This document shows, one piece after another, positions 3,262 through 40,793 of a DNA stretch of 64,000 nt. The translations under genes and the position numbers were made by a program. Numbering within the stretch: the stretch's first letter is position 1; each line of letters starts with the position of its first letter. The stretch covers positions 1 to 64,000 of IMG/VR virus record IMGVR_UViG_3300030041_000009; one strand, given 5' to 3'. The notes under the pieces were generated by a model that saw nothing but the letters and a program-made list of their open reading frames with translations, had not been told where the DNA came from and searched no databases.

Positions 3262-3732
3262 ATGAGAAAAATTTTACTAGGCATAATAATGCTATTCGCT
3301 TTTAGTGTATATTCAAATACTCAAAACATTACAACAAGATTTATTGATAAATATAATGCATTAACTATATCATTAAGCAACGAATATAAAATCCCTGCTA
3401 GCGTAATTCTTTCAATTTCAATATGGGAAAGTGGTTCTGGAACAAGTAAATTGAGTAGAACTAAACATAATTATTTTGGAGTTAAACAAGGAAAACATTA
3501 TAGAAGTTATGAAAATGATTCTATATCATTTAGGCATTTTTGTGAGTTTACTTCAAAAAGAAAATATTATTCTAAATTAATAAATAATAATGTTACAGAT
3601 TATAATATATGGGTACATAACATTCAAAGAGGTGGATATTCGCAAACAAAAAATTGGGGTAAACATATCGTTGACATGATTAAAATATACAATTTAAATA
3701 AAATTGATAATCAATATGTTTTTATTGATTAA
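3262..3732 (+). CDS. GH73 glucosaminidase (FlgJ-like peptidoglycan hydrolase) with signal peptide
   Basis: IPASVILSISIWESGSG, HNYFGVK, GGYSQ; hydrophobic N-terminus MRKILLGIIMLFAF. Confidence 0.85.
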   Translation: MRKILLGIIMLFAFSVYSNTQNITTRFIDKYNALTISLSNEYKIPASVILSISIWESGSGTSKLSRTKHNYFGVKQGKHYRSYENDSISFRHFCEFTSKRKYYSKLINNNVTDYNIWVHNIQRGGYSQTKNWGKHIVDMIKIYNLNKIDNQYVFID

Positions 3733-3889
3733 TTTGAAAATTATTTAATTTATTGAGTTTTTCAATTCTATCATCTTTCAATTTTTTTCTTTCTGCTTCT
3801 CTATCATATTTATATGATAGTTTTGCGTTTGAAAAACTTGGATCTGCTACTAAATCATAAGTAAATAGTTTATTTAAAATTATTTTCAA
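3722..3889 (-). CDS. 55 aa mini-protein: prohead-protease-like motif plus RxxKLxxL tag
   Basis: Own translation (TTG start): MKIILNKLFTYDLVADPSFSNAKLSYKYDREAERKKLKDDRIEKLNKLNNFQINQ. Confidence 0.6.
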   Translation of the reverse strand: MKIILNKLFTYDLVADPSFSNAKLSYKYDREAERKKLKDDRIEKLNKLNNFQINQ

Positions 3890-4181
3890 TTGATTTTAAT
3901 TTCTTTTTTCTTAAATGCTTAACATATTCATTTGGAAAATTATCATAGTCTAATACAGGTTTATCAGATGCTTTTTTTATCATATCTAATTGCCATTGTA
4001 TAGATTCTATTGGATCCTCACATTCACTTTCATATGAAAAAATGTTTATTGAATTTTCTGTACAAGATTCAGGTATATCACTTTCATCATTGTAATATAC
4101 TTCATAAACACCAAATTCGACTTCAGAGTCAAAATCTGTTACCATTCTTTTTGCTAAAATTCTATAATTCCAATACGACAT
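3870..4181 (-). CDS. Phage protein (WNYR type) with RxxKLxxI tag
   Basis: MSYWNYRIL...YEVYY...LRKKKLKSI. Confidence 0.7.
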   Translation of the reverse strand: MSYWNYRILAKRMVTDFDSEVEFGVYEVYYNDESDIPESCTENSINIFSYESECEDPIESIQWQLDMIKKASDKPVLDYDNFPNEYVKHLRKKKLKSIENNFK

Positions 4182-4217
4182 AATATATTTATATCACATG
4201 ATAAAAAAAAGTTTAAT

Positions 4218-4247
4218 AAAAAAGTCAGAATAATTATTCTGACTTTT
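4218..4247. terminator. Bidirectional intrinsic terminator; identical copy at 15732-15761
   Basis: Palindrome AAAAAAGTCAGAATAATTATTCTGACTTTT. Confidence 0.75.
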
Positions 4248-5691
4248 CTATTGTATCTAATTTAATTAATTTGTTTGTTTTTATAGCTGATCGTATGTCA
4301 AACTTATCAGAATGACAACCATTTTGAAATGGTACTTTTTTTCTCCATAAGAATTCGTCTGATATAATATTTTCAAATGATTTTCTCAAAATATACTTCA
4401 AGTGTTTTCCTTTACCGTTATTTTCATCACGATATTTTGGAGGTATTCTTAAACAAAAATTCACAAAATTATAATCAGCAAATGGAGTTCTTGCTTCAAT
4501 TGTACCTCCATACATCATAGATTTATTTAATGTACTCAGATTTTTATGATTTACATTTTTAACTAATGATATTCTTCTGTTATGATATTTTGTTTCATCA
4601 TTCCAGCACCACCTTTTAACATCATCATATGATCCAAATATTTCATCACTAACATCTCCACCAAATACTACTTTAAATCCTCTATTTGATATTTCTTTAG
4701 CTAATAATATTTGTGCAATAGCAAATGATAATTGAATATAATTTTCACTTTCTATCGCATAAATTGTTTCTTGCAATTTTTCTTTCATTACATCAAATGG
4801 AATATCAATAATAACTAATTTTATATTATTTTCTTCTGAGAATTTTTTTGCAAAATATAAATCATCTTTTAATATTTTTTTTGAATTTGTGGTGCCAGAT
4901 ATATTTATAACAAAACTTGTAATATTTTGTATTCTTTTAGATAATAAATATGTTATTAATGTAGAATCTATTCCACCACTTAATATTGTGCATATGGGTA
5001 CATCTGATACTAATTCATTATCAATAGCGGCATTTAGTAATCTTCTTATATTCGTTGTATAATAATTTTCACCTTTGTCAATTTTGTCATAATTAATATT
5101 ATCAAATGTAAAATATTTTGACATTTTTAATTCATTAGTATCTAAAAAATATTCTAATACTGTACCAGGCTGAACATCACAAATATTATCATTGGTATCA
5201 AAACATTTTTTTTCACTGGCAAATATCAGTTTACTATCATACTTATAATGAAATGGTAATCTTCCAATATAATCCCTACCTAAAACCAATTTATTTTTAA
5301 TTTTATCCAAGATACAAAAACAAAACATACCGTCTAATGATGACATAAATTTTATTAAATCGTCAGAATATTCTATATAAATTAATAATAATAATTCTAC
5401 ATCTGATTTATAATTATTAATATTGTATTTTTTTCTCAAATATGAAAAGTTATCAATAGTTCTATTAAATAATTCACCGTTAAAAACAATAACATAATTA
5501 TCATCTTTACTATGAAATGGCTGATTTGAATAATCTGACAAATCAACAATAGATAATCTATTATGACCCATAAATATATTTTTATATTCGTATATTTCTT
5601 GATAATCTCTTCCTCTGTGCTTAATTTTATCTAATGATATCTGAATATCTTCTTTAGATCCGAAACCATTTCCACCTACAATTCCACACAT
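4234..5691 (-). CDS. asnB: Asparagine synthetase B-like glutamine amidotransferase
   Basis: MCGI Ntn start, HRG, HNRLSIVD, FNGE, LSGGIDS PP-loop, SDEIFGSY, EARTPF. Confidence 0.85.
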   Translation of the reverse strand: MCGIVGGNGFGSKEDIQISLDKIKHRGRDYQEIYEYKNIFMGHNRLSIVDLSDYSNQPFHSKDDNYVIVFNGELFNRTIDNFSYLRKKYNINNYKSDVELLLLIYIEYSDDLIKFMSSLDGMFCFCILDKIKNKLVLGRDYIGRLPFHYKYDSKLIFASEKKCFDTNDNICDVQPGTVLEYFLDTNELKMSKYFTFDNINYDKIDKGENYYTTNIRRLLNAAIDNELVSDVPICTILSGGIDSTLITYLLSKRIQNITSFVINISGTTNSKKILKDDLYFAKKFSEENNIKLVIIDIPFDVMKEKLQETIYAIESENYIQLSFAIAQILLAKEISNRGFKVVFGGDVSDEIFGSYDDVKRWCWNDETKYHNRRISLVKNVNHKNLSTLNKSMMYGGTIEARTPFADYNFVNFCLRIPPKYRDENNGKGKHLKYILRKSFENIISDEFLWRKKVPFQNGCHSDKFDIRSAIKTNKLIKLDTIEKSE

Positions 5692-5858
5692 AAATTTAGT
5701 TTGTTTAATTTATTTCTTCTTGTAACATTCTTTATTGCTATATCAATAAGCTTGTTTGTGATATCTTTTTTATAATATCTGAAATAATAATCTCGTTTAA
5801 GTAATTCTAATTGAGATATACTAGCTGTCATTAATTTATTAAGAATACCATCTTCCAT
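5676..5858 (-). CDS. Small protein with RxxKLxxL tag
   Basis: Ends RRNKLNKLNL. Confidence 0.55.
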   Translation of the reverse strand: MEDGILNKLMTASISQLELLKRDYYFRYYKKDITNKLIDIAIKNVTRRNKLNKLNLCVEL

Positions 5859-5981
5859 TTTTTTTATATAATAGCATTTCTCCTACTACCTGAATATCTT
5901 TATATTTTAAAGTAAGTTCAGTAATTAATTCTAATTCTTCACAAGAATTATTTAACATTTTAATTAACTCTTCCATATTTT

Positions 5982-8071: not shown

Positions 8072-8305
8072 GATTTTATATTTTATATTGTTTATAACTT
8101 AAGCCCAGAAATTTCAATCACAATATCTTCTTTTAATTTACCAGTACAAATTGCAAGAACTTCACTAATTTCAAAAATTGAAATTCTATCGACATCTTCT
8201 TGATTTTTGCTTGATCTAACAAATGCTCTTGCATTGTTTATCATCATTTTATAATACGGATTTTCCATTTGATTTAGTTTTATAATTTTGATACAAAGAT
8301 ATATA

Positions 8306-8363
8306 AAAAAATCCAGAACTAATCTGGATTTATTGTTTATTTAAAAAGATTAATATTATTTAA
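8306..8363 (+). repeat. Imperfect direct repeat (terminator plus flank); second copy at 11471-11524
   Basis: AAAAAA(T/G)CCAGAACTAATCTG...TTTATTTAAAAAGATTAATAT(T/C)ATTTAA in both copies. Confidence 0.7.
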
Positions 8364-8602
8364 CTTATTTCATATTCACTTTTTATTTTTAATAACTTAA
8401 GTTTTCTCTGTTCTTGAAGTGTACAGAAATATTCATAGAAATTAGGATAATCTCCTACAAATTTAGTTTTATTAAGAGAAAATATTCCAAAATTATACAA
8501 ATAAACTATATAATCATCATAAAATATAATATAATAATATTCACCTTCAATATAATTATTATATGCCTTTTTACAAATATATTTTGTATTTTTATTTAAC
8601 AT
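8360..8602 (-). CDS. Small protein with RKLKLLKI tag
   Basis: Ends FCTLQEQRKLKLLKIK. Confidence 0.6.
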   Translation of the reverse strand: MLNKNTKYICKKAYNNYIEGEYYYIIFYDDYIVYLYNFGIFSLNKTKFVGDYPNFYEYFCTLQEQRKLKLLKIKSEYEIS

Positions 8603-10537: not shown

Positions 10538-11452
10538 ATGAAATATGTAAAAACATTTGAATTATATCGTGACTATGATATAGATTCTGTTGGTAATCTT
10601 GCTGTTGGTAATCTTGGTGGCTATCCTAATAATAAAAAACAATTATTAGCTTATATAGAAGCTGGCGGCGATATTGATGTTATAGATAAAAATGGAAACA
10701 CTCCTTTAATTAGATCTGTTACAAATAGCAAGAGTGAACTGACAAATATTTTAATTAAAAGTGGAGCAGATTTAAATATTCAAAATAATAATGGAGAAAC
10801 AGCATTAATGAAAGCAACAAAAAATAGAGATGTCATGAGATACATTAGTTTATTGATAGATGCTGGTGCAGATTGGAATATAGAAAAATATGACAAATTT
10901 TTATCATCTGTAGAAAATCCTATCTCTTATAGAGACAAATTATTAGCTAATATTGATTTTTTTGAGATGTTAACACCAAAATATCAAGAATTAACAAAAG
11001 AAAAATATCCAGAAAAATATAACTATTATTTAAGTAAAAAAGAAAGTTCAAATTCAAATTCAAATTCAAATTCACAGAATAATAAAGGAGATACAGCATT
11101 AATTTATGCAGTGAAAGATAGAAACATTAAACGTGTAGAATCTTTAATAAAATCTGGTGCAAATTTGAATATACAGAATAATAAAGGTGAAACAGCATTA
11201 ATTATTGCTGCTCGTTATCTAAATATGAATATAATTTATAAATTGATAGAAGCTGGATCAGATTGGAATATAACTAAATATAAAGATAATACTATTCTTT
11301 CATTTAATTCTATTAATGGTGGTAAACCTTATACGCCGAGAGGTAAATTTTATGAAGAAAAAGATTTTTTTGAAATATTATCACCAAAATATCAAGAAAT
11401 ATTAAAAGAGAAATATCCAGAAAAATATGCTAAATATTTGGCAAAAAAATAA
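10538..11452 (+). CDS. Ankyrin-repeat protein, internally duplicated, CTS-like leader
   Basis: GNTPLI/GETALM/GDTALI/GETALI repeats; duplicated DFFExLxPKYQExxKEKYPEKY; (AATTCA)n linker. Confidence 0.85.
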   Translation: MKYVKTFELYRDYDIDSVGNLAVGNLGGYPNNKKQLLAYIEAGGDIDVIDKNGNTPLIRSVTNSKSELTNILIKSGADLNIQNNNGETALMKATKNRDVMRYISLLIDAGADWNIEKYDKFLSSVENPISYRDKLLANIDFFEMLTPKYQELTKEKYPEKYNYYLSKKESSNSNSNSNSQNNKGDTALIYAVKDRNIKRVESLIKSGANLNIQNNKGETALIIAARYLNMNIIYKLIEAGSDWNITKYKDNTILSFNSINGGKPYTPRGKFYEEKDFFEILSPKYQEILKEKYPEKYAKYLAKK

Positions 11453-15783: not shown

Positions 15784-17655
15784 TTAGTGAACTTCTTCGA
15801 AATCCACGTCATTTATGTTTTCAGATTCATCTTTATTAGTTGATGTACTTTCATTAGTTGATTGATTATTATTCTCTTCGTAAAGCTTAGAACTTATATT
15901 TTGCCAAGTATCATTCAATTCTTTACTATATTTATCAATATCATCCAGATTTTGAGTTTTGTGAGCTTCTTTAAGATTATCAAGCTTAGAATTCAATTCA
16001 GTTTTATTTGATTCATTCAATTTATCGCCATATTCTTCAATTTGTTTTTCAGTTTGAAAAATCATAGCATCTGCTTGATTAAGTTTATCAATCTTTTCTT
16101 TTTCTTTTTTATCTGATTCCGCATTTTGCTCAGCTTCCATCTTCATTTTTTCAATTTCTTCTTTTGTTAAAGATGATTTACCTTCTATTCTAATATCATT
16201 AGATTTACCAGTTGCTTTATCAACTGCTTTAACTGTCAAAATTGAATTGCTATCTAAACTGAATGTAATTTCAATCTGTGGTGTGCCTCTACGAGCAGGT
16301 GGAACATCAAGTGAAAATGTGCCTAAATGTTTATTGTTTTTGTATAGAGGTCTATCTCCAGTACAAACATTTACCTGTACGCTTGGTTGTGAATCTGATG
16401 CTGTACTAAATACTTGACTCTTAGATGTCGGGATCGTAGTATTTGCGGGAATCATGATAGTAGCAATTTCACCCATTGTCTCAATAGAAAAGTTCAACGC
16501 TGTTACATCAAGTAATAATATATCTGTATTATCTCCATTTAATACAGAACCTTGAATAGCGGCTCCAGATGCAATTGCAGTATCAGCATTTAGAGATTTA
16601 TTTGCTTTTTTACCAAAGTATTTTTCAATACTTTCTACCAAATAAGGTATCCTGGTGCTACCCCCCACTAAAATTATATCATCAAATTGTGAAATTTGTT
16701 TGTTACTTTTCTTAAGTGATGACATAATTAATTTCATTGTTTTATCAACATAAAATTGAATTAATTGCTCAAATTTAGCACGAGTAATAATTTTATTTAA
16801 ATGTCGTGGTTGTCCATCTACCGCCGTGATGTACGGTAAGTTGATTTCAGTTTGTGTTACACTAGATAATTCTATTTTTGCTTTTTCTGCGGATTCAGTA
16901 ATACGTTGTAGTGCCATTGAATCTTTACGAATATCTACACCAGTTTCTTTTAAAAATTCTTCAGAAACATAATCAACAATTGCATCATCAATCAAATTTC
17001 CGCCTAAATCTAAATTACCGTCTGTTGATAGTACTTCATATAAACCATCTGATACCGTAATTGCTGAGCTATCCGTTGTACAACCACCAGCATCTATGAC
17101 CATATATAGTTTATCTGTCTTATCTTTAATATTTAATGCTGCTGCTGTTGGCTCTGAAATAATTCTATCTACTTGAAACCCAGCTATTTCACCTGCTACC
17201 TTAGTGCAACTTCTTTCATCCGAATTGAAATAAGCTGGAGTCGTTATAATTACCGAGTCTATTTTACAAGATAGATAATCTTCTGCTGTTTTTTTCATTT
17301 TTTGAAGAATCATTGCTGAAATTTCTTCTGGCGAATATACTCTATCACCAATTTTTACTGCTGCCTTACCATTATTATCAACTATATCATAAGGACGTTT
17401 TAGATGTTTAACTTCATCATATGTTCTACCAATAAGTCGTTTAATATTAAAAATGGTATTTTTAGGATTTAATGCTGCTTGGCGTTTAGCAGACTCTCCA
17501 ACTTTAATTTCTCCTGTTTTTTGATCAAATGCTACGATAGAAGGAGTTGTTAAATTTCCTTCTGCGTTTGGTATAACAACTGCTACACCTCCCTCAATGA
17601 TGCTTACTACCGAATTGTATGATCCAAGATCTACTCCAATAATTTTTTTACTCAT
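15784..17655 (-). CDS. dnaK: Hsp70 chaperone DnaK (divergent)
   Basis: GVDLGSYNS, TPSIVAF, TTPAYFN, EPTAAA, LVGGSTRIP, PQIEITF, C-terminal DVDFEEV. Confidence 0.95.
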   Translation of the reverse strand: MSKKIIGVDLGSYNSVVSIIEGGVAVVIPNAEGNLTTPSIVAFDQKTGEIKVGESAKRQAALNPKNTIFNIKRLIGRTYDEVKHLKRPYDIVDNNGKAAVKIGDRVYSPEEISAMILQKMKKTAEDYLSCKIDSVIITTPAYFNSDERSCTKVAGEIAGFQVDRIISEPTAAALNIKDKTDKLYMVIDAGGCTTDSSAITVSDGLYEVLSTDGNLDLGGNLIDDAIVDYVSEEFLKETGVDIRKDSMALQRITESAEKAKIELSSVTQTEINLPYITAVDGQPRHLNKIITRAKFEQLIQFYVDKTMKLIMSSLKKSNKQISQFDDIILVGGSTRIPYLVESIEKYFGKKANKSLNADTAIASGAAIQGSVLNGDNTDILLLDVTALNFSIETMGEIATIMIPANTTIPTSKSQVFSTASDSQPSVQVNVCTGDRPLYKNNKHLGTFSLDVPPARRGTPQIEITFSLDSNSILTVKAVDKATGKSNDIRIEGKSSLTKEEIEKMKMEAEQNAESDKKEKEKIDKLNQADAMIFQTEKQIEEYGDKLNESNKTELNSKLDNLKEAHKTQNLDDIDKYSKELNDTWQNISSKLYEENNNQSTNESTSTNKDESENINDVDFEEVH

Positions 17656-17658: not shown

Positions 17659-18230
17659 TTACTTTAATTTTTTTTTTGAATTATTAATTTTTTTTAATTT
17701 TAATTTTCTATATTCTTTTAGTGATATGAATCTTTTAACATCTAATGAAAATGAACTATTACCAAATTCTTCAAATGATAAATTTATATATATGTAATCT
17801 AAATTACCAAAAGTTTTATAATAATCTGTTGTAAAATAATCATTATCTGATGAATACCACACTCTTCTGACTGTTAATATATCATATTTTTTAATATTAA
17901 TATTATCTTTTTCAAATAATTTATTATTTTTTAAAAGTTTCAAATAATCATCAAATGAAAATATATTATAATCTACAATTACTACTTTATCTCCTGATTT
18001 AAACACAACTTTTCAAGTTTTAATTTTCTATATTCTTTTAGTGATATGAATCTGTCTGCTCTGAAATTTCCTCCTATATTAATTAATTTTATATATTGAT
18101 TAAGCATATAATAATGACCATAACTTTCTATTTTATACGTAGAATATTTTTTCAAATTCTTATATGGTTCAAATGTTTTAGTATCATTACTATCATCAAT
18201 ACAAACTATTATATTTCCTTCTTTAAACAT
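17659..18230 (-). CDS. Two small FKxGD (KOW/SH3-like) proteins with an identical RFISLKEYRKLKL tail
   Basis: ORFs 17659-18006 and 17982-18230 share about 35 bp of identical DNA at the tail. Confidence 0.7.
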
Positions 18231-18611: not shown

Positions 18612-20006
18612 TTAAAACTTTTTCATTTTTTGATAAGAAATAGCATTTCTTTCATTGCTACGTTGTTTATCTTTCTTTTTTTGTTCTTTTCTATCTTTCC
18701 ATGAAGTACCTTCAGATTTATCTTTGATGTTTAAGATTGGTTTAATTTTATCAAGAATTAATGCAGTAGGTTCAATAGCTTTTTCAATCATTTCTGAGTT
18801 TTTGTAAGCAAATGGAGATTCATCAATTGTACTTTTACATACAGATGTTGAATAAACATTTTTCATTACTCTCTGAAAATCTTTTAAATCAATTGACTCT
18901 TTTGCTTTTGATCTTGACATCAATCTACCACTACCATGCGGAGCTGAATTATTCCAGTCTTCATTCGATTTCCCTTCACATATAAGTATTCCATCTCTCA
19001 TATTGAATGGTATAATCATTTTTTCTCCAAGATAAGATGATATTGCTCCTTTTCTTATGATAAAGTCTTTAAAGTCGACATAGTTATGTATTGAATTTAT
19101 TTCTTCATCAAATTTTTTGATATTTAATGCTTTTTTTATCAAAGATAACATAGTTTTTCTATTCCATAGAGCATATTGTTGTGCAAAAATCATATCAAAT
19201 AGATATCCAATAAGATTTTCACCGTCTAAATATTCTTTATTAATATTAAGACTATATCTTGTTCTTAAATCTTTTATTTTTTTATCAATATCAGATTTTG
19301 GATAAGTGTTCATAACAATATCATCTAATTCCATATTATATTCTTTGGTAGCAACAAATACTTTACCTCTTGCTACATTAGTCCAATATTCAGCAATTTT
19401 CAAACCAAAATTTCTTGAGCCAGAGTGAACTGTTATCCAATAATCATTAGTTTTATCTGATTTGCCAAGTTCAATAAAGTGATTGCCTCCTCCTAATGTA
19501 CCAATTGATTGAAAAAATTTACCTTCATCCATATTAATATCTTTCAATTTAGCTGTTAACCATTTTTCATTATATGTTGGTGACTCATAAGAAGTTCCAA
19601 ATTTCTCATTAAATTTTGCAGCAAATTTATCAGCAATTACTTGTACATCATCAAAAGGAATATTTTTGAATACTATATCTTCATGCATATCAAATCCCAT
19701 AGGAACATTTTCACGTATCAGATTATCAATTTTCTCTAAATCTAATGAAGTTTTACCTGAAAATCTTGCAGACAACATGCCACATCCGATATCTGTTCCG
19801 ATCGTACTTGGTTTGATGTATTTTCCTAATTCCATGGAAAATCCAATGCAGATATCCGATCCAACATGTGCATCTGGCATTATTCTAATTTTCAATCCAT
19901 TAGATGTTTCTGAGTTTATAACATTGTATATTTGAGTAAATACTCCTTCTTCAACTTCATCTATAAATATTTTAGCATCTGTATATTTACCTTTTAATTC
20001 TATCAT
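18612..20006 (-). CDS. rtcB: RtcB RNA 3'-phosphate/5'-OH ligase
   Basis: MPDAHVG, DIGCGM, GTLGGGNHFIE, VHSGSR, HNY, RKGA, PHGSGR, DESPFAYK. Confidence 0.95.
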   Translation of the reverse strand: MIELKGKYTDAKIFIDEVEEGVFTQIYNVINSETSNGLKIRIMPDAHVGSDICIGFSMELGKYIKPSTIGTDIGCGMLSARFSGKTSLDLEKIDNLIRENVPMGFDMHEDIVFKNIPFDDVQVIADKFAAKFNEKFGTSYESPTYNEKWLTAKLKDINMDEGKFFQSIGTLGGGNHFIELGKSDKTNDYWITVHSGSRNFGLKIAEYWTNVARGKVFVATKEYNMELDDIVMNTYPKSDIDKKIKDLRTRYSLNINKEYLDGENLIGYLFDMIFAQQYALWNRKTMLSLIKKALNIKKFDEEINSIHNYVDFKDFIIRKGAISSYLGEKMIIPFNMRDGILICEGKSNEDWNNSAPHGSGRLMSRSKAKESIDLKDFQRVMKNVYSTSVCKSTIDESPFAYKNSEMIEKAIEPTALILDKIKPILNIKDKSEGTSWKDRKEQKKKDKQRSNERNAISYQKMKKF

Positions 20007-20062: not shown

Positions 20063-22420
20063 TTAAAATGTTTCACTAATTTCTTTCAATTTATTTTTTC
20101 TTTCAATTCTTTTACTAATAAAAAATGTTTTAATAATTATATAGCAATCAACGTTAACATCAGTCATTATTAATATAGAACTATTTTTTTCATCTTCATA
20201 AATGTTTAATATTCTATATTCTTTACCTACTGTTATTAATAAATCATTTGTATTATCATTTTTTATACAAATAGCTAATTCTCCAACTTTAAATTTGTTG
20301 TTTGATTTCATTTATTTTCATTTTTCTAAGTTTTTGTTTACTAATGAAATAAGATTCAGGTACAAAAAAATTATAATTATTATTACATATCATATACATA
20401 TTACTTGAATTACAATTACTTAATTGAAGTACTTTATATTCGTTATTTATTGTCAATAATAGTTCAGTAAAAGTATCATTTTTTATACAAATAACTAATT
20501 CACCAACTTTAAATTTGTTTTTTGATTTCATTTATTTTCATTTTTCTAAGTTCTTTTTTACTAGCAAAACAGGATTTAGGTACAAAATAATTAATATTTA
20601 TATCGCATGTTACGCATATATTATCAGTATTAAATATTCCCATTGCTGATATTTTATATTCTTTATTTATTGTCAATATATTTGAATATTCAAAGGTTTT
20701 TATACAAACAATGGTATCATTTGTTTTGAACATATTTATTTAGTTTTTCAAGTTTAAATTTTCTTAAATCTTTTAAATTCTTTTTATTTATAAAATATGA
20801 ATCAGGTAACGGCATTATAAGATTATTATCGCATATTATATTTAAATATCCGCTATTTTTATATATCCATAATATTTTATATTCTTTATCTACTGTTATT
20901 AATTGATTGCTATTTTTTATACAAATAGCATAATCATCAATTTCAAATTTATTATTTTTAACTAATTTCATTTAGTTTATTTAATTTTAATTTTCTATAT
21001 CCTTTTACACTTATAAATCTCGTCATATCATAAACTGAATATCCATATTTATTTTCAATTTCATCTAATATATATGAAGTGCTTTCATATCGACTACTAG
21101 TATCATCAAGTGATTCATAACAATTTCCATCATCTCCCCAATATGATAGAATTTTTTTAATTGTGTAAGTTTTATTTATTTCTAATGGATTTATTTTATG
21201 AAATTCTAACATATATGATACGAAATCATAAAAAACATAATCTTGTTTAGGTTCATTATCTATACAAACAACTACATCACCTATTTTGTACATATTTATT
21301 TAGTTTTTTTAATTTTAATTTTCTGATTGATTTAATATCAGTAAAAAAACTTATTGGTACAAATTGGCTGAATTTTTTAGTGTCACTTTTTACTACAATT
21401 TTATTTTGAAAATACCAATCAATATATTCAATTTTATATTTTTTACCTATTGTTAAATGTTGATCCCAATAATCATTATCATCAATTTTTACACAAGTGA
21501 CAATTTGGCCAATTTTAAAATCATAATTTGTCAATTCATTTTCTTTCATTTAGTTTATTTAGTTTAACTTTTCTTAAAATTAAAATTAATTGATTTTCGG
21601 GTAAAGATAATAATCTAAATCTCATATTTGTATTCACTATATGATTATAATGAATAGTTACAACATAATTATCATTATTACAATCATATCTTATTTCACG
21701 TATATAAAAATCACTGTCTGGTATTTGTTCATCATAATATTTTTTCAGTTCTCTTAATAACAATAAATATGATTTGGTATCTAAGTTTGAAACTATATTG
21801 GTTGGCATAATTTATTTAGTTTATTTAGTTTATTTATTCTGGATATATTATTTAATTTGCATTCAGATAAATAATGATGTTCAGTAGTATAAAAATATCC
21901 TGATAATCTATATTTTTTTCTCATTTTAACAGAAATAACATACTCAGAATTATTATGATAACTTTTTCTAAATCCTGATATATCATATACAGTATATTTA
22001 AAATTATCATTTAGTATATTTGAATAATATATTTTTAATTCTTTGAGTAAATTTTCATATGATTGCGTATTTTCTTTATATTTATACATTATTAATTTTT
22101 TCTAATTTTTGTTTTCTTAAAAAAATATTATGTTCTTTATCATCATTAAATTGATATAATATATCATTAACTACTTCATATTTAGAGTATGTAATAACAA
22201 ATGGCAAATAATCATCAAATTTAATATAGAAAGAATATTCACTTGACATAAAAATTGAAAAACTTAAATTAAATTTCTCAGTCATTGCAATTATTGCGCC
22301 AGATCTAATTAATTCATTTTTTTCATTCAATTGAATATATTTATCCATAGAATAACAGTTTTTAGGCATACCCCATAACCCGTTATCTTGTTTTTTAGAA
22401 TTTATTTTTATTATTTGCAT
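20063..22420 (-). CDS. Tandem array of nine small overlapping ORFs, all ending in the RxxK[LI]xx[LI] tag
   Basis: ORFs at 20063, 20289, 20509, 20717, 20958, 21277, 21536, 21793 and 22082; the first six are [FY]KxG[DE]-xxCI paralogues; near-identical junction DNA at about 20282-20332 and 20502-20552. Confidence 0.75.
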
Positions 22421-22428: not shown

Positions 22429-22932
22429 TTATAAATTGCCTAATTTACTTACTTCGTCATTTAATTTAGTTCCAAGTGATTCTAAATTTATCATTTGCTT
22501 TTTTATTTGTTCTATACTATTATTAAATTCTTCTTTAATATCTTCTTCAGATATATCTTCGCTTGTCATTAGTTCATCAAATTTTTTAAATAATTCTTGA
22601 CTTTCTATATTATTTGATACAAATTCGAATGAATCATAATCTATATTTTGATCAATTTGATATTCATTTTCAGTTATTTTTTTATCTATGGTAAGTATAT
22701 CATTTTTCCTTTTATCTGAAAATTCTTTAAAGTTAAAAACATATTCTTCATTTTTAAGAGGACACCATTCTGCAGTGTAAAAACTAACATTATCATTAAA
22801 ATTAATAAAATATTCATCATTTTTTAAAAATTTTGATAGTATACATTCACTTATTGGTTCATCTCCTGATTCATAATAATATTCAGTATTACAAAATGGA
22901 CAATTTCCACAGCAATTTACGGTTTTTTTCAT
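22429..22932 (-). CDS. CxxCPFC zinc-finger plus coiled-coil protein
   Basis: CCGNCPFC...C...WCPL. Confidence 0.6.
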   Translation of the reverse strand: MKKTVNCCGNCPFCNTEYYYESGDEPISECILSKFLKNDEYFINFNDNVSFYTAEWCPLKNEEYVFNFKEFSDKRKNDILTIDKKITENEYQIDQNIDYDSFEFVSNNIESQELFKKFDELMTSEDISEEDIKEEFNNSIEQIKKQMINLESLGTKLNDEVSKLGNL

Positions 22933-23093
22933 TTTAAATTATTTATTTTTTCGATTTTTTCTTTTCTTTTCTTATTGAGTTCTTTTCTTTTAATTTCTCT
23001 CATAAATTCGTCATCAAATATAATATGTTTAGGATATAAGTTTGCATAATCCATATTTACTATCTGATATTCAAATTTATAATTTTTCTTCAT
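22929..23093 (-). CDS. 54 aa mini-protein: PolB motif A-like segment plus tag
   Basis: Own translation: MKKNYKFEYQIVNMDYANLYPKHIIFDDEFMREIKRKELNKKRKEKIEKINNLK. Confidence 0.6.
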   Translation of the reverse strand: MKKNYKFEYQIVNMDYANLYPKHIIFDDEFMREIKRKELNKKRKEKIEKINNLK

Positions 23094-23314: not shown

Positions 23315-23539
23315 TTTTATTAGATTATTTTTTAATAATCTAATATTTATCTAATTTTTTCTTCATTTTTGATATATTATGCTAATTTATTTTTTATATA
23401 TATGTTTTTTAAATAAATGTTTTTTAAAAATATAAAACTTTTTTTATTTATAATATATAAGTGATATAATTTTAAATGAACTATACTCAACTAGATTTTT
23501 ACAAAGATAACAAAAATATTTAATAATACAAATTTTTAT

Positions 23540-23830
23540 ATGATAAATAATAAAGTTGAAAGACTTTTAGCTGGAGAAACTATTATTAGTAAAGAACCAG
23601 GAAACTCAATGCTTCCAATAATCAAATCAAAACAGCCTGTAACATTAGAACCTGCAACTTGGGAATCAGTTGAAGTGGGAGATATTGTATATGCTAAATA
23701 TCACGGAAAATTATATACACACTTAGTAAAATCAAAAAACTCAGAACAAGGTGTTCTTATTGGTAACAATAAAGGACATATAAATGGATGGACCAAAAAT
23801 GTTTATGGTAAAGTAATAAACATTTTATAA
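23540..23830 (+). CDS. S24/S26 peptidase-like protein
   Basis: GNSMLP, VGDIV, THLVK, IGNN. Confidence 0.7.
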   Translation: MINNKVERLLAGETIISKEPGNSMLPIIKSKQPVTLEPATWESVEVGDIVYAKYHGKLYTHLVKSKNSEQGVLIGNNKGHINGWTKNVYGKVINIL

Positions 23831-23846: not shown

Positions 23847-25879
23847 ATGATGAGAGCAATATGTAAGCTAGATTACGGACAGTTTGAAAATAACAAAACC
23901 TACAATTATTCATGCACTAACGACAATAAATTCCACGTTGATGGTCAATATGGAAAAACAGAATTTAATAAAAGACAATTTAATGCATTATTTACATTAG
24001 AAAGAACAAAAAACCCAAACAAATCATTTAATTTTTAATATCTAATTTATGAAATTTAATATCGGAGATAATGTTATATTCATAAATAATTCTAAAACTA
24101 TTTATGCTTGGGATCTTGTTGATTATAAAATCTATAAAATTGAGAATTTTTCAATTCGTTCGTCTGAATTTATGTATTCGGTGAGTGATAATGATAGTAA
24201 TACAACTCAAAGTTGGTATTTTGAATGTGATTTTATTTCATTGCAAGAATATAGAAAAATTAAATTAAACGAAATAAAACAATTATCATGAGAAGATTTA
24301 GTAAAAAATTAAAAAATATATTTAATTCTATTAATCCATATTACGAAATTAATAAAGAATCCGATAGATTTCAAGAACTCAGAATAAAATTGAATGAAAA
24401 TCGATTAGATTATATAATAAAAGAGTTTGAAAGAATAGAAAATATGAGTGATGAAGAAAGAATAGAATATAAAAAAAATTTATTGAAAGAAGAAGCAAAT
24501 AATATAATTGATAAATTAGAATCAAATTCAGAATTATATAAAGAATATAATAATATTATGAGGAGAAAGAAAATTAAAAAATTAGAAAGTAATGAGTAAT
24601 TTAGTAGAACATGCAAAAAGAGAATTTCTTAAATTAGGTTATAAACCAATTGATAAATGCGAAAATGATCCAAATAAATGGATACAAGAAAATATATTAG
24701 AATTACTTGAAATATTTTCTAAACAAGGTCATTCTGGATTTTCAGCATCATATGTACTTAGTTATTTTAATAAATTGGCTAATTTTGAACCAATTGCTCC
24801 GATTATGTGTACCGATGATGAATGGAATGATATAGCAGATGAATGTTATCAAAATAATCGTTGTTCTGCAGTATTTAAAGAAAAAATTGATAGTAATCCA
24901 TATTATTTGGATGCTATTATTTTTGTTGATGAAAATAATTCATCTTTTACTGGTAGAGCATATAATAATAGTCATGATAGTATAACAAGTAGGCAAACAA
25001 TTAAATTACCATTTACACCTAAACGTTTTTATGTTGATGTAGTTTATTATAATGATGAAAATCATATTAAAGATGAATCCCAATTAAAAGAAGTTTGGAA
25101 ATATTATGAGCATCAAGAAACTAAGTCATATATTAGATTACAAAAATTAAAATCAATAGAATGAAAATTGGAGATGTTCAAGTTTATTTAGGAGATACTA
25201 ATATGTATTATACTAAAAATAAAAAATATTATGTATATAGGATAAATTCTCATTTTATACCTGGAACTATTTGTGGACATATAATGAATGATATAGGAGA
25301 TAGTGTTTATTTTCGTGATGATGATATCGACAGGAATTGGATAGATTTAAAAAAATATAGAAAAGAAAAAATTAATAATTTAAATAATATTTATGAAAAA
25401 AACTTTGAATGATTTTGATTATAGTTTTAAATTTCCTGATAATGATTTTAATAATTTATCGTTAGAAATGCTACAAAAATGGAAAACATTAATCAATCAA
25501 GATAAAATAAAATTAAAAAAAGAAGAAAGAATTGCTAAATTAAATGAAATAAATTCTAAATAAAATGACAATACAAAATTATAAGAAAAAATATTTAATA
25601 TGTAAAGATGATTTTGGTAAAAATATTTATGTTGGAGATACTGTGGAATTATTTTGTCCACTTGAATTTTCAACTACATGGAAATCAATTGTTTATTGGA
25701 GTATGTTATCTGGAGCGTGGGTAGATTTTCCTACTATATTTATTGATACTCCAAATCCTCAAAGAATTTTATATTCATTACTTAATCAGCAAGAATATAA
25801 TATTTGTGATGTAGATAGTGATATTCCAATAAAATATAAAGGATATTGTAAAAAAATAAAATCTTTTTATACAAAATAA
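23847..25879 (+). CDS. Run of small ORFs (23847, 24049, 24288, 24592, 25161, 25393, 25565); five carry the C-terminal tag
   Basis: Tails YRKIKLNEI, RRKKIKKL, RLQKLKSI, RKEKINNL, RIAKLNEI. Confidence 0.65.
25393..25563 (+). CDS. 56 aa mini-protein: LxKWxxLI segment plus tag
   Basis: Own translation: MKKTLNDFDYSFKFPDNDFNNLSLEMLQKWKTLINQDKIKLKKEERIAKLNEINSK. Confidence 0.55.
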   Translation: MKKTLNDFDYSFKFPDNDFNNLSLEMLQKWKTLINQDKIKLKKEERIAKLNEINSK

Positions 25880-34208: not shown

Positions 34209-34276
34209 ATTTTTATATCTTTAATAATTAGATTACAAAGATACAAAATATTTTTTATATACAACTATTTAAGTGA

Positions 34277-35414: not shown

Positions 35415-35432
35415 TTTGTTGATATTATTTTT

Positions 35433-36339: not shown

Positions 36340-36359
36340 AACAAAAAAAATTAAAATTA

Positions 36360-37694: not shown

Positions 37695-37695
37695 A

Positions 37696-37726
37696 TAAAA
37701 AAGCTACTCATTTGAGTAGCTTTTTT
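37696..37726. terminator. Bidirectional terminator
   Basis: AAAAAAGCTACTCATTTGAGTAGCTTTTTT. Confidence 0.8.
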
Positions 37727-38578
37727 TTATTTTTCTTTTTTAAGTTTAACAGCATCTTTAATACTAAATTTTTTAATTACTAGAGGATCATCAGGAGATT
37801 CAATATAAACATCTTTACCGTCAATTCTATTCACACGTCCATTCATAATATCATTATCTATGTATACACCAGCATTAAGAATTGATCTTTCTTTTGGTGT
37901 TTGTGGATCGATAACATTAAAGTCTGATATTTTTTTAACCCATTGTGCTTTTACTGCACCTATGCCGAAGTTTGGATCAGATTTAGGTTCTTCTTCTTGA
38001 CCTAACATAGTATATTTAGGCATTTCATTTGATTCTGTTATTTCATCAATTTTTAAATAATCATACAAATCTTCAACTTCTTTATCACTAATTGAATTTA
38101 ATGCATCTTCATCAATATCTGAGTTACTATTAAGTATTTCTTTTTTTAAAGTTTCAATATATTCACTATATTCGTCATATGCAGGTTTAGCTTCTACAGA
38201 ATCTCTACTATAATATTCTTTTATTACATCTTTTGCTACATCAGTTCTTTTTGTCTTTGTTACATTTTCTTCTTTCCAATTATCATCAAAATCTTTAAAT
38301 TTTAATACATTTTCAATATTTTTCATATTACTATAATTATTTTCTTTTATTGATTGATTTACTAATTTAGATTTGAACGCAATTGTTTGTAGTTTACTAT
38401 CCTTTGCAGCAAATTCATCCCAGCTTTCTATATGATGATCAACTGCATTACCTATATATTGAAGATTTGGAATGCCTTTATTCATTCTATCATTGGTTGT
38501 TAAATCTCCGATATCTTTTCCTTTGGTCTCTGCTCTTAATTTTTTTAATTGTCGAATACTAGTTTCTCTTGGTAACAT
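37727..38578 (-). CDS. Hypothetical late protein with TKRTDVAKD motif
   Basis: ORF; late-type motif upstream. Confidence 0.65.
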   Translation of the reverse strand: MLPRETSIRQLKKLRAETKGKDIGDLTTNDRMNKGIPNLQYIGNAVDHHIESWDEFAAKDSKLQTIAFKSKLVNQSIKENNYSNMKNIENVLKFKDFDDNWKEENVTKTKRTDVAKDVIKEYYSRDSVEAKPAYDEYSEYIETLKKEILNSNSDIDEDALNSISDKEVEDLYDYLKIDEITESNEMPKYTMLGQEEEPKSDPNFGIGAVKAQWVKKISDFNVIDPQTPKERSILNAGVYIDNDIMNGRVNRIDGKDVYIESPDDPLVIKKFSIKDAVKLKKEK

Positions 38579-38649
38579 ATTAAGTTGTTATTTTTTATGT
38601 ATATATTAAAAACCGTTTTCCGTTTTTTTATAAAAAAATGTTGTGAAAA

Positions 38650-40498
38650 TTAATTCACAACATTATCATTTTTCTTTTCCATTATTTTTATTAATTCAAG
38701 AATTTTTGTTTTTTCATTAAATGTTTGAATTTCTTTATCAGAAATTTCTAATGGTTTAAAATGTAAAACTATTTCACCTCCTGCTAATTTGTGTAATTTA
38801 CCTTCAACAGTATGCCAATCTAAAATTCTGTGAATTCCTTCTATATGTGAAATTACATTTTCATTTTTTGATATTTTAATAGCATGTTTTTTATTTCTTT
38901 TATAAATTTCAATCGAAGGACATCCTTGATTACTAATAATACCAATCTCTTTAGAATTTTCATCAAATAATTTAGAATAAATAGTGAACTCTATGTTACA
39001 ACGCTTTGTTGTATATCCAAGTGATATACATATATCTTCCATAAAATTAATATTAAATACATCATTTATGACATAGTATTCCATTATACCATATTTTTCA
39101 ATTATTGGATTTTTAATATTATTATTTTTTCCTATCCATTCTTCTTTTGTCATATTTGTCATTTTACCAACAATCATAATCAGTTATATTTTCTTCTTTT
39201 TTTAAAAGATTATCAATTATAATTACTGCAGTTCCTATTCCTGTTGGAGTAAATCTATAACTAAATCTACCGCCTATTGCTGTTTTCGGTGATTTTTTCT
39301 TTTTCTCTTGTTTTTTGATCCATTCATTTGCAGATTTTTCTTCTTTTTCATTTAAATAATATGTTATCATAATTTAATATATTTTTAATTGTTCAAGTTT
39401 TTGCTTACGAATATCTTGTTTACAAAAATGATGATAATCTATTAATCTAATAGTAATTAATTTCATTCTATTTTTTGCAAGTTCTATATCAAAATATTTT
39501 ACTGAATAACAAGCTAAATCATCAGTATACGTAGATAATTTTATATCTTTTATTATATTTTCACCTAATGAATTTATAGATTTTAAATAATTTTTAACTG
39601 ATGTATTTTTCATTATTTTAATTTCTTAATTGTTTTAATTTTTATATCTATCATTGATATCAATCTATTTATTTCTTGAGAATGAATGCCACCCTGTGAT
39701 ATTTTAATTAAATATTGAATATTTATATTATATAAATCTTCTAATATGGTAATTGTATCAGAATTATTTATCAAAGTTTCAAGTTCTGTACTATCATTCC
39801 AAAAAATTTTATTTTTCCTTGTAGAATTAGTAGTAATTATTATTAATGAAGAAAATAAAAAAGATATATAAAGCGCCAATTTAAGCATAATATTAACTGA
39901 AATATCTTTATCTATAGTAATAAAATAAACCATCGAATAAATAATAATAAAATATATCACGAATGATATACCAAAAATAATCCATAAAGAACATTTACTA
40001 AAAAATTTAGTTATTGCTTTCATAATTTTATTTTTTTAAACTGAAATAATATAGAATTAACCATGATAAAACTAATATAATAAAAATAATTAACAAATAA
40101 TATTTACTAAAAAAATTATTTATTGCTTTCATAATTTTATTTTTTAAATGTAAATACTAAAAAGTTTATAAACCTATGCTTATGAATAATATCAAACAAT
40201 TACTTTTAAATTTATTTGAGAAAATAGAATACATATTTAAAAATATAGTAAATTCGCTAATCAATTCTTTAAATTTTATATCTGCATCTTCTTGACTCAT
40301 TTTATTATCAAGTACATAATTTTTAATATCAATCATTCTATTTGATAAACTAAATACTTTTTCGACCATTTTGTCAGAAAAAACTCCAATCAAATCAAAT
40401 GTTTCCATTAATTTGTTGAAAGATTTATAATTATCAATATTATTATCATTTATCCAAGAATTTTCTAAATTAAAACTATAGTCTGATTTCATTTCCAT
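38650..40498 (-). CDS. Five hypothetical ORFs (38650, 39164, 39374 tagged, 39613 two-TM, 40166)
   Basis: Co-oriented packed ORFs. Confidence 0.6.
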
Positions 40499-40565
40499 TT
40501 ACATTTGTTTGTTTAATTAATAATGTACAAAGATAATAAAAATAATATGTAGTTCATTACATTTT

Positions 40566-40793
40566 TTATTTATTTAATTTTTTTTTAATGTTTTTTGAAT
40601 TAGATATTTTTTCAAGATTTTTTAATTTTTTAATTCTTTCTTCCTTTTTCTTTCTTTTGTTTTCGTATTTTTTTAATATTTCTGCAGTTTTAAAATTAAT
40701 AATTATAAAATCTCCTGATCCTGAAAGTTTTTTATTATGTATCAGATTAGATGCATCTAATAATTTTTGATAAAGTTCATTATTAATCGACAT
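40566..40793 (-). CDS. 75 aa mini-protein: major-capsid-like segment plus tag
   Basis: KLLDASNLIHNKKLSGSGDFIIINFKTAEIL...EERIKKLKNL. Confidence 0.6.
   Translation of the reverse strand: MSINNELYQKLLDASNLIHNKKLSGSGDFIIINFKTAEILKKYENKRKKKEERIKKLKNLEKISNSKNIKKKLNK

What the first reader, a model, noticed from the sequence alone, without database searches (positions are those of the whole stretch)
3722..40793. Candidate decoy/mimic library: core phage protein motifs fused to a common C-terminal helix
Seen: four 54-75 aa ORFs, three absent from the ORF track, each with a short conserved-looking segment, a charged linker and the RxxK[LI]xx[LI] tail. These are 3722-3889 (KLFTYDLVADPSFSNA), 22929-23093 (IVNMDYANLYPKHI), 40566-40793 (KLLDASNLIHNKKLSGSGDFIIIN) and 25393-25563 (MLQKWKTLI). 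Established, recalled from memory: these resemble the DxVxxPS motif of gp21-type prohead proteases, PolB motif A (this phage's own polymerase has CFDFSSLYPTTM), the RGxGNFII region of gp23-type capsid proteins, and, weakly, the LxEKW N-terminus of gp23. Several host defences (Avs, CapRel) sense conserved phage proteins. Inference: these are not random debris but epitope decoys or adaptors. They could bind sensors that recognise core phage proteins and titrate them or deliver them to a hub bound by the tail. They could also poison competing phages.
Basis: partly seen in the sequence, partly recalled or inferred. Interest (0 to 1): 0.92.

Follow-up and report, generated by a model that had tools for sequence, protein, structure and literature searches.

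The report
Tagged mimic peptides in a megaphage
A peat megaphage labels over a third of its proteins with short shared end-tags, and four tiny tagged proteins carry pieces copied from the phage's own capsid protease, capsid protein and DNA polymerase; no such protein-labelling scheme turned up for phages in the libraries and papers searched.

Summary
All four ORFs exist, three of them on the minus strand. Three have orthologues in a relative that is about 65% identical, with dN/dS of 0.27-0.51.

The shared tail is real and far larger than reported. In this 256-kb contig, 120 ORFs carry R-K-x-K-[LI]-x-x-[LI] within 12 residues of the C-terminus, against 1.5-2 expected. The contig is a roughly 36% fragment of a ~710-kb Mahaphage-type megaphage from peat. 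The tail is selected at the protein level and is modelled as a helix. No Pfam or PHROG family covers it.

- It holds for 3722-3889 (prohead protease; hhalign 95.8%, z about 14-21).
- It holds for 22929-23093 (PolB motif A; hhalign 80.6%, 12 residues only).
- It holds for 40566-40793 (major capsid protein, z about 5, plus a tagged 284-aa capsid-protein half as paralogue).
- It fails for 25393-25563.

The 735-kb sister phage LR756501 carries a different tag, DPYGEExW, on the same kinds of cargo: capsid-protein fragments and a protease paralogue. A second tag, ...KFN[LI]-stop, marks 56 more genes in this contig.

What the tags and the fragments do is untested. A role as decoy or competitor peptides is plausible but not shown.

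The parts
3722..3889 (-). Mini-gene (55 aa, TTG start). Residues 3-27 copy a conserved strand at the end of the prohead-protease domain. A K/E/R-rich spacer and the tail RIEKLNKL follow.
   Evidence: Orthologue L145:18149-18304 is 62% identical, dN/dS 0.27. The database holds it as a called gene on 13 contigs.
22929..23093 (-). Mini-gene (54 aa). Its N-part holds N-x-D-[YF]-A-[NS]-L-Y-P, which resembles PolB motif A. A charged spacer and the tail RKEKIEKI follow. It overlaps the next gene by 4 nt.
   Evidence: Orthologues: L150:2004-2171(-) and L149:1334-1501(+). dN/dS 0.36.
40566..40793 (-). Mini-gene (75 aa). Residues 3-43 resemble capsid-protein residues 455-495 of LR756501 and residues 144-184 of the tagged 284-aa capsid-protein half at genome 167695-168549. 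A spacer and the tail RIKKLKNL follow.
   Evidence: Pfam Gp23 weakly hits the G005 orthologue at model positions 220-262 (E 0.002).
25393..25563 (+). Mini-gene (56 aa) with the same build: N-part, charged spacer, tail RIAKLNEI. No source was found for the N-part.
   Evidence: Orthologue L145:1266-1484 is 43% identical, dN/dS 0.51.
20063..22420 (-). Array of ten overlapping tail-carrying small genes (80-112 aa).
   Evidence: Orthologues in L145 keep the tails.
24049..25412 (+). Four tail-carrying genes upstream of 25393-25563. One is 24592-25164: a Tad3 domain (Thoeris ThsB inhibitor) plus a 70-aa extension ending in RLQKLKSIE.
   Evidence: Pfam Tad3, E 1.4e-35. Contigs from an RNA library, 100% identical, lie over 24589-24871.
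17659..18230 (-). Two tail-carrying genes of the SH3-like family. 17982-18230 was modelled as a beta-barrel followed by a C-terminal helix at residues 64-79, which is the tail.
   Evidence: (pLDDT 84.8).
3870..4181 (-). Tail-carrying gene (103 aa) just upstream of 3722-3889, overlapping it by 20 nt.
   Evidence: dN/dS 0.16.
40783..41265 (-). Tail-carrying gene (160 aa) just upstream of 40566-40793.
39374..39613 (-). Tail-carrying gene (79 aa).
5676..5858 (-). Tail-carrying gene (60 aa).
8360..8602 (-). Tail-carrying gene (80 aa).
45372..46856 (-). N-terminal half of the phage's PolB (exonuclease domain plus motif A, CFDFSSLYPTTM). It is the presumed source type for the motif in 22929-23093.
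43380..43706 (-). The only member in the window of the second tag class (ends ...KKFNL-stop).

Best explanation
Shown. The window comes from a ~710-kb Mahaphage-type megaphage found in peat and freshwater metagenomes. About 37% of its genes end in one of two lineage-specific tags. Tag A is a basic amphipathic C-terminal helix, F-x-x-x-K-E-Y-R-K-x-K-L-x-K-L, followed by 1-9 more residues. It sits on at least 120 proteins of unrelated N-terminal sequence. It is conserved as protein, not as DNA.

The four ORFs are real, conserved genes and form a small sub-class of tag-A proteins. Their cargo is not a folded domain. It is a 12-40 residue stretch copied from the most conserved part of a core phage protein: the prohead protease, the major capsid protein, or PolB motif A. 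The source of the fourth is unknown. A K/E/R-rich spacer, probably a stiff single helix, joins the cargo to the tag.

Inferred. The tag is an address or docking peptide for one common partner (a hub). The mini-proteins are tethered mimic peptides that compete with the parent protein for whatever binds that segment. My preferred target is a host immune sensor that watches conserved head and replication proteins. In that case the peptide acts as a decoy or blocker, held at or delivered to the hub. The alternative target, the parent protein's own assembly partner, is listed as a rival.
For: Tag is real.
- 120 ORFs against 1.5-2 expected.
- Lysine at motif position 2 in 95 of 120, although the search pattern did not require it.

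Selection acts on the protein.
- Arg is coded by AGA, CGA, AGG, CGT, CGC and CGG, and Leu by TTA, CTT, TTG, CTA and CTC. The exact DNA consensus fits only 11 of 120.
- In 71 orthologue pairs the motif codons have dS 0.49 and dN 0.15. The N-terminal parts have dS 0.63 and dN 0.33.
- 22 of 120 tagged genes have no downstream gene. The motif is placed more tightly relative to its own stop (SD 6.2 nt) than to the next start (SD 13.7 nt).

Tag is modular.
- The N-terminal parts fall into 77 BLAST clusters.
- The tag is attached to a Tad3 domain, to SH3-like barrels where it forms a helix, to a capsid-protein half and to a TerL ATPase fragment in G005.

Tag is lineage-specific and replaceable.
- Tail-profile hits at E <= 0.001 number 3-80 in 17 IMG/VR contigs, which are fragments of ~700-kb genomes. 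The own genome gives 112 at E <= 1.
- At E <= 1, LR756501 and Lak-B1 give none and LR756502, LR745206 and LR756500 give 8, 6 and 1 weak hits.
- LR756501 instead has 109 copies of DP[YF]GEE.W against 0.013 expected. These sit on the same cargo types: an SH3-like domain, three capsid-protein fragments and a protease paralogue.

Mini-genes are real.
- Orthologues have dN/dS 0.27-0.51, like their neighbours.
- The build is kept in G005 and G018.

Fragments come from core proteins.

The parent proteins are known immune triggers. The review PMC13728456 reports the prohead protease and capsid proteins as CBASS cues and the major capsid protein as the CapRel trigger.
Against: - No hub has been identified. 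The one complex prediction allowed gave no answer.
- No binding, localisation or expression data exist for the mini-genes. The RNA-library contigs cover only the Tad3 gene and one neighbour, and they could be DNA carry-over.
- The phage's own protease and capsid-protein genes are not on any contig I could read. Co-variation of mimic and parent could therefore not be tested.
- PolB motif A and the protease strand are buried core elements. They are not obvious surface epitopes for a sensor.
- The PolB match is 12 residues long, and the window copy alone is not significant.
- The fourth ORF has no identified source.
- Only a few of about 200 tagged small ORFs are core fragments.
Confidence: 0.4

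Rival explanations
1. The mimic peptides act on phage assembly, not on host immunity. They may be dominant-negative or timing regulators of the phage's own head assembly. They may also be weapons that poison the protease, capsid or polymerase of related co-infecting phages.
For: - The copied segments are the most conserved parts of the protease, the capsid protein and PolB, so they would cross-react with relatives.
- Larger tagged truncations exist that could co-assemble: the 284-aa capsid-protein half, a 178-aa protease paralogue and a 169-aa capsid-protein piece in LR756501.
- The protease pieces found are the first and last conserved strands and hold no catalytic residue.
Against: - Self-poisoning would have to be avoided, and no mechanism for that is seen.
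- A 12-residue motif-A peptide is unlikely to disturb a polymerase.
- No assembly data exist.
Confidence: 0.22
2. Tag A is a packaging and ejection signal. Tagged proteins are loaded into the very large capsid and injected with the DNA as a ready-made effector set. The core-protein pieces help dock them inside the prohead.
For: - The tag is short, C-terminal, basic and helical, as I recall for the P22 scaffold and encapsulin cargo tags (from memory, not checked here).
- Giant phages do package dozens of ejection proteins (SPN3US, PMC10052503).
- One cargo is Tad3, which binds ThsB directly and so could act at low copy number.
- The pieces come from head proteins (protease, capsid protein, possibly portal).
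Against: - More than 100 different cargos is far above any known case.
- No protease cleavage motif is linked to the tag.
- No virion proteome exists.
- LR756501's tag also occurs many times inside large proteins. That fits a hub-binding motif better than a loading signal.
Confidence: 0.15
3. The tail is mainly the coding shadow of a nucleotide signal: an A-rich translation-initiation or coupling region for the next, overlapping gene in a host without Shine-Dalgarno use. The four ORFs merely sit at such junctions.
For: - In 98 of 120 cases a same-strand gene starts nearby, with a mode of 24 cases in which the ATG begins 1 nt after the motif.
- The last Leu or Ile codon ends in TA in 90 of 120.
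- dS in the motif is slightly lower, 0.49 against 0.63.
- The second tag, KFN[LI]-stop, always ends in xTA and forms an ATGA overlap in 34 of 56 cases.
Against: - 22 tagged genes have no downstream gene, 3722-3889 among them.
- The offset to the next start is loose (SD 13.7 nt).
- Arg is invariant and uses six codons.
- dN is cut more than twofold while dS is nearly normal.
- Conservation extends about 16 residues upstream.
- The motif is internal in orthologues of 40566-40793.
- LR756501's tag is not A-rich and also occurs inside proteins.
Confidence: 0.1
4. The mini-ORFs are neutral debris. They are fragments left by partial gene duplication or homing-endonuclease traffic that happen to stay open and to end in a lysine-rich stretch.
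For: - Fresh partial duplications occur: 41325-41429 repeats 24 aa of 42290-43342 at 100%.
- Core genes in this clade are split by mobile ORFs: RtcB with a LAGLIDADG ORF in L145, and the PolB half followed by a DUF7487 ORF.
- Homing enzymes target conserved motifs (general knowledge).
Against: - dN/dS is 0.27-0.51, equal to neighbouring genes.
- Length, spacer and tail are kept in relatives that share only 43-62% identity.
- The regex arises by chance in 1-3% of shuffles per ORF.
- The same theme recurs with a different tag in LR756501.
Confidence: 0.08

Closest known systems
T4 capsid-targeting sequence (CTS) of internal proteins IPI-III and Alt
   Same: A short shared peptide on otherwise unrelated accessory phage proteins sends them to one destination. 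Some cargos are anti-defence proteins.
   Different: The CTS is N-terminal, about 10 residues long, removed by gp21 after L-x-E, and sits on a handful of proteins. Here the tag is a C-terminal helix on at least 120 proteins, no cleavage motif is linked to it, and no destination is known. (Details of T4 are from my own knowledge.)
Encapsulin cargo-loading peptides and the C-terminal coat-binding helices of the P22 scaffolding protein
   Same: Short C-terminal peptides or helices dock cargo to the inside of an HK97-fold shell. The P22 element is basic.
   Different: There is no sequence likeness and no evidence of loading. The number of cargos here is much larger.
C-terminal translocation signals of Dot/Icm and VirB/D4 type IV secretion effectors
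   Same: Hundreds of diverse proteins share a loose C-terminal signal, acidic in one system and basic in another. This parallels tag D against tag A.
   Different: Those are bacterial secretion systems. Here the tags are phage-encoded and no transporter has been identified.
Hub-binding short linear motifs (SSB C-terminal tail, clamp-binding motifs)
   Same: A short terminal motif is shared by many partners of one hub. LR756501's DPYGEExW, acidic with an aromatic residue and often repeated inside proteins, behaves like such a motif.
   Different: The sequences differ, the hub is unknown, and the share of the proteome involved (about 37%) has no precedent that I know of.
Phage proteins sensed by defence systems: T4 Gol peptide/Lit, major capsid protein/CapRel, prohead protease and capsid proteins/CBASS, terminase and portal/Avs
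   Same: The parent proteins of the fragments (protease, capsid protein, TerL, possibly portal, PolB) are classes reported as triggers (PMC13728456). Gol shows that a roughly 30-residue capsid peptide can be the sensed unit (my own knowledge).
   Different: I found no report of a natural phage-encoded decoy peptide cut from its own core protein. Nothing here shows that these peptides meet a sensor.
Tad3 (Pfam PF25185), inhibitor of Thoeris ThsB
   Same: Window 24592-25164 matches the family over residues 2-121 and scores above the cut-off.
   Different: It carries a 70-residue extension ending in tag A that the 119-position family model does not cover.

Membership tests
Tag-A proteins of this megaphage lineage (defined here) | Core motif R-x-x-K-[LI]-x-x-[LI] near the C-terminus, conserved in orthologues | tested here: met
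   All four ORFs have it. R, K and both hydrophobic positions are kept in every orthologue found. In 40566-40793 it lies 15 aa from the end, and about 37 aa from the end in the orthologues.
Tag-A proteins of this megaphage lineage (defined here) | Match to the 29-position profile of all tails, including the F-x-x-x-K-E-Y lead-in | tested here: inconclusive
   3722-3889 scores E 0.0098 and 25393-25563 scores E 0.084. 22929-23093 and 40566-40793 are not hit. Their lead-in is a K/E/R-rich spacer instead.
Peptidase_S77 / gp21-type prohead protease | Full protease domain with the catalytic His and Ser | tested here: not met
   3722-3889 aligns only to residues 144-169 of the LR756501 and LR756502 proteases, after the catalytic part. 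Pfam finds nothing at E <= 10. It is a derived fragment, not a member.
Gp23-type major capsid protein (PF07068) | Pfam match above the cut-off, covering the HK97-fold body | tested here: not met
   The window ORF has no hit at E <= 10. The G005 orthologue scores 14.6 bits against a cut-off of 24.4, over 43 model positions. A PDB profile search finds no capsid protein. Only a 40-residue stretch is alike.
Family B DNA polymerase | Exonuclease and polymerase domains with motifs A, B and C | tested here: not met
   Only a 12-residue motif-A-like stretch aligns. There is no Pfam hit.
Tad3 (PF25185) | Pfam match above the gathering score | tested here: met
   Window 24592-25164 scores 122 bits against a cut-off of 27. 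This concerns a neighbouring tagged gene, not one of the four ORFs.
T4-type capsid-targeting sequence | N-terminal position and L/I-x-E cleavage site | tested here: not met
   The tag is C-terminal. Glu at the matching position occurs in only 32 of 120.
Anti-defence decoy | Binds or blocks a host sensor of the parent protein | not testable with these tools
   The host and its defence systems are unknown.

The most novel reading that the evidence does not exclude
Mahaphage-type megaphages run a proteome-wide address code. Each lineage has its own short terminal peptide tags: RKxKLxKL and KFN[LI]-COOH here, DPYGEExW in the 735-kb phage LR756501. The tags dock a third or more of all phage proteins to dedicated hubs. 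Into this system the phages feed peptide copies of their own most conserved head and replication motifs. These act as decoys that blind host sensors of core phage proteins.
Probability: 0.2. Interest if true: 0.95.

Novelty: categorically new. Interest (0 to 1): 0.86.

Why it matters
If the tags are docking signals, they would be the first sign that the largest known phages organise hundreds of accessory proteins through a simple, lineage-specific peptide code. Such a code would give a handle for sorting thousands of 'hypothetical' megaphage genes into functional classes from sequence alone. It would also give portable tags for experiments.

The tagged fragments of protease, capsid protein, terminase and polymerase raise a directly testable idea. 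Phages may answer immune systems that sense conserved core proteins with self-derived peptide mimics, rather than by mutating essential genes. Even if the decoy reading is wrong, three facts need an explanation:
- Short pieces of essential proteins are under purifying selection.
- The same theme appears in two lineages with different tags.
- No family in Pfam or PHROGs covers the tail.

Tried and rejected
- DNA-level reading of the tail: rejected on codon diversity, near-normal dS and tagged genes without a downstream gene.
- Stop-codon recoding as the cause of 'C-terminal' tails: an amber-suppressor tRNA exists, but tagged genes stop at TAA 79, TGA 25 and TAG 15 times. Reading TAG as sense hardly changes the ORFs.
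- Pfam and PHROGs scans of all 117 tagged proteins: only Tad3 is significant, and no family covers the tail.
- Pfam on the four ORFs at E <= 10: nothing.
- PDB profile search with the 40566-40793 family: only spurious charged-helix hits.
- Proteome-wide blastp-short screen: swamped by low-complexity hits, as reversed queries showed. I replaced it with Smith-Waterman z-scores and phmmer runs that had reversed controls.
- 25393-25563 against the capsid protein, and against all large proteins: no signal.
- Search for the tail-clade's own protease and capsid protein in 19 contigs: not found.
- Database searches for the mini-ORFs: only near-identical copies returned.
- AlphaFold2 model of the 284-aa capsid-protein-like protein: failed, pLDDT 28.8 with two sequences, so no fold search was run.
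SH3-tagged protein with 3722-3889 gave no answer.
- Literature: nothing on DPYGEE in phages, on megaphage C-terminal motifs, or on capsid-derived decoys.

Full report
**What is there.** The four ORFs exist as described. Three are on the minus strand. Each has a short N-terminal part, a K/E/R-rich spacer and the motif R-x-x-K-[LI]-x-x-[LI]. The window is the first 64 kb of a 256,033-bp, 22% G+C viral contig that CheckV rates 36% complete.
- Its PolB half is closest to the 735-, 642-, 636- and 634-kb 'Mahaphage' genomes. Identity to LR756501 is 54.6%, and it is more distant from the Lak phages.
- Al-Shayeb et al. 2020 predicted Bacteroidetes hosts for those genomes (PMC7162821).
- Near-identical DNA occurs in peat, freshwater and permafrost metagenomes.
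- A homologue of one tagged gene lies on a 711,471-bp contig.

**The tail is a proteome-wide tag.** Across the contig, 120 ORFs carry the motif within 12 residues of the C-terminus. Residue shuffles give 1.5 and composition gives 1.9. Only 17 hits lie elsewhere in ORFs.
- The extended consensus is Y-F-[IY]-[TS]-[KL]-[KQ]-E-[ILY]-R-K-x-K-L-[KEN]-K-[LI]-[NK]-[EK], followed by 1-6 more residues.
- With tails removed, the proteins fall into 77 BLAST clusters and range from 33 to 353 aa.
- One is a Tad3 domain with a 70-residue extension ending in the tail.
- A 26-sequence family was modelled with pLDDT 84.8 as an SH3-like barrel whose last strand runs straight into the tail helix.
- No Pfam or PHROG family covers the tail.

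**The tail is selected as protein, not as nucleotide signal.**
- The conserved Arg and Leu use all their codons, and the exact DNA consensus fits 11 of 120.
- In 71 orthologue pairs between this genome and IMG/VR contig G005, the eight motif codons have dS 0.49 and dN 0.15. The N-terminal parts have dS 0.63 and dN 0.33.
- Twenty-two tagged genes have no downstream same-strand gene. The motif sits tighter to its own stop than to the next start.
- A minor nucleotide component cannot be excluded. In 24 cases the next ATG begins 1 nt after the motif, and the last codon ends in TA in 90 of 120.

**The tag is lineage-specific and replaceable.**
- A 29-position tail profile finds 112 sites in the own genome at E <= 1.
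- At E <= 0.001 it finds 3-80 sites in each of 17 IMG/VR contigs, all 4-46% complete. It finds none in nine unrelated phages picked up by the DNA pattern.
- The published relatives have none or only weak hits at E <= 1. LR756501 has 5 regex hits in 735 kb.
- LR756501 instead holds 109 copies of DP[YF]GEE.W against 0.013 expected. Forty-one lie 2-6 residues from the C-termini of small ORFs, and 68 lie inside larger proteins, up to four per protein.
- Homologous cargo carries either tag. An SH3-like domain is followed by DPYGEEDW in LR756501 and by the RKxKL helix here.

**The four mini-genes are real.** A relative at about 65% protein identity (L145, the same phage type as G005) keeps orthologues of 3722-3889, 22929-23093 and 25393-25563. 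Identities are 62, 57 and 43% and dN/dS values are 0.27, 0.36 and 0.51. Neighbouring accepted genes give 0.16-0.47. 40566-40793 has orthologues of 96 and 97 aa in G005 and G018, with the N-part and the tail core conserved. With a composition filter, this spacer-type build turns up only in these four gene families in both genomes.

**Test of the 'core motif' claim.** The contig has no capsid-protein or protease gene. I therefore located them in LR756501 and LR756502. There the genes run portal, then protease with a scaffold-like region, then major capsid protein.

| ORF | Tested against | Result |
|---|---|---|
| 3722-3889 | Prohead protease, residues 139-164 of LR756502 | 16 of 25 residues identical; SW 89 against shuffles of 28.8+-4.0. 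hhalign 95.8%, score 45.5 against 9.4+-1.7. phmmer E 8.8e-7. Untargeted z 13.7, where the reversed-sequence null reaches at most 4.6 |
| 40566-40793 | Major capsid protein, residues 455-495 | SW 50 against 28+-4.1, 0 of 1000 shuffles; hhalign score 25.3 against 12.0+-2.4 |
| 22929-23093 | PolB motif A | Orthologues keep N-x-D-[YF]-A-[NS]-L-Y-P and one reads DFASLYPS. Family profile against seven PolBs: 80.6%, score 34.8 against 12.8+-2.5, over 12 residues. Window copy alone not significant; untargeted z 2.8 |
| 25393-25563 | Major capsid protein and all large proteins | No detectable source |

40566-40793 also resembles residues 144-184 of a tagged 284-aa protein. That protein is itself a homologue of the C-terminal half of the capsid protein (SW 115 against 38+-5; phmmer E about 1e-7).

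**The theme recurs.**
- In G005, a 53-aa tagged ORF matches protease residues 40-60 (p 0.003; Pfam Peptidase_S77 E 0.07). A 221-aa tagged protein holds a TerL ATPase fragment (E 4.5e-6, z 8).
- A 120-aa tagged protein of this genome weakly resembles the portal (z 3.9).
- In LR756501 the DPYGEExW tag sits on a 178-aa protease paralogue (E 4e-26). It also sits on capsid-protein pieces of 169, 101 and 78 aa, on a scaffold-like protein, and on two pieces of a 1285-aa protein.
- Core fragments remain a small minority of tagged proteins.

**A second tag in this genome.** Fifty-six further ORFs end exactly in [AST]-[ND]-K-F-N-[LI]-stop against 0.25 expected. G005 has 94 and LR756501 has 1.
- They are separate from tag-A genes and clustered at 144-224 kb.
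- At least 19 are ankyrin-repeat paralogues of window 10538-11452.
- Their last codon is always xTA, and 34 form an ATGA overlap with the next gene. A nucleotide role is therefore more plausible here than for tag A.
- By greedy tiling, tags A and B together mark about 169 of about 460 genes.

**Interpretation.** Four points are shown:
- A protein-level C-terminal tag is shared by unrelated cargos.
- The tag is specific to the lineage and is swapped for another tag in a sister lineage.
- The four mini-genes are under purifying selection.
- Three of the four mini-genes derive from protease, capsid protein and PolB.

Two points are inferred. The tag docks to a common partner, and the mini-proteins act as tethered mimics of the parent segment. 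The parent proteins belong to classes reported as immune triggers (PMC13728456), which makes a decoy role attractive. However, the copied protease strand and motif A are buried elements, the hub is unknown, and no functional test was possible. The rivals are assembly control or anti-competitor poison, a packaging signal, an RNA-signal shadow, and neutral debris. Each is weighed in its own section.

**Limits.**
- All comparisons with parent proteins use relatives, not this phage's own genes.
- ORF calls are mechanical.
The untargeted screen supports only the protease case strongly and the capsid-protein case moderately.
- The contigs from an RNA library lie only over the Tad3 gene and one neighbour, and they do not prove transcription.

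Noticed in passing
window 43380-43706 (-); genome 80-220 kb (L001-L008): A second C-terminal tag. Fifty-six ORFs end exactly in [AST][ND]KFN[LI]-stop against 0.25 expected, and G005 has 94. The last codon is always xTA and 34 of 56 form an ATGA overlap with the next gene. At least 19 are ankyrin-repeat paralogues.
   Followed up: partly
LR756501 (loci L162-L200), e.g. L156:1228-1770 and L162:11317-11850: The 735-kb sister megaphage lacks both tags. It has 109 copies of DP[YF]GEE.W against 0.013 expected: 41 at C-termini and 68 inside proteins. Carriers include capsid-protein fragments and a protease paralogue.
   Followed up: partly
window 10538-11452 (+): A 304-aa ankyrin-repeat protein (Pfam Ank_2, E 5.8e-25). 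It is the untagged relative of a large family of shorter proteins that end in KFN[LI].
   Followed up: partly
window 43708-46856 (-): PolB is present only as an N-terminal half (exonuclease domain plus motif A). A 533-aa DUF7487 ORF follows directly. No C-terminal polymerase half was found on the contig.
   Followed up: partly
window 18612-20006 (-) and L145:6851-9339: RtcB is one ORF here. In the relative L145 it is split into two ORFs by an ORF with a faint LAGLIDADG hit.
   Followed up: no
genome 248960-249031 (-) and 145044-145207 (L010, L005): There is an amber-suppressor-type tRNA (anticodon CUA) and two tRNA-Gln genes. TAG ends only 4 of 164 long ORFs, but reading TAG as sense changes few ORFs in this fragment.
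   Followed up: partly
window 41325-41429 (-) and 42290-43342 (-): A 34-aa ORF repeats the first 24 residues of the 350-aa ORF upstream at 100% identity. This looks like a recent partial gene duplication.
   Followed up: no
window 15784-17655 (-): A phage-encoded Hsp70/DnaK-like protein (623 aa) sits among tagged genes. I considered it as a tag receptor but did not test it.
   Followed up: no
window 54178-61919: A TIG-domain protein, an 823-aa double glycosyltransferase and a fused CN-hydrolase/NAD-synthase gene (60093-61919). The last could serve NAD+ replenishment.
   Followed up: no
window 23512-23662 and 24589-24871: Contigs from a permafrost metatranscriptome library match at 100% over the 96-aa gene 23540-23830 and over the Tad3-tail gene. 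Nothing in that library matches the mini-genes.
   Followed up: partly
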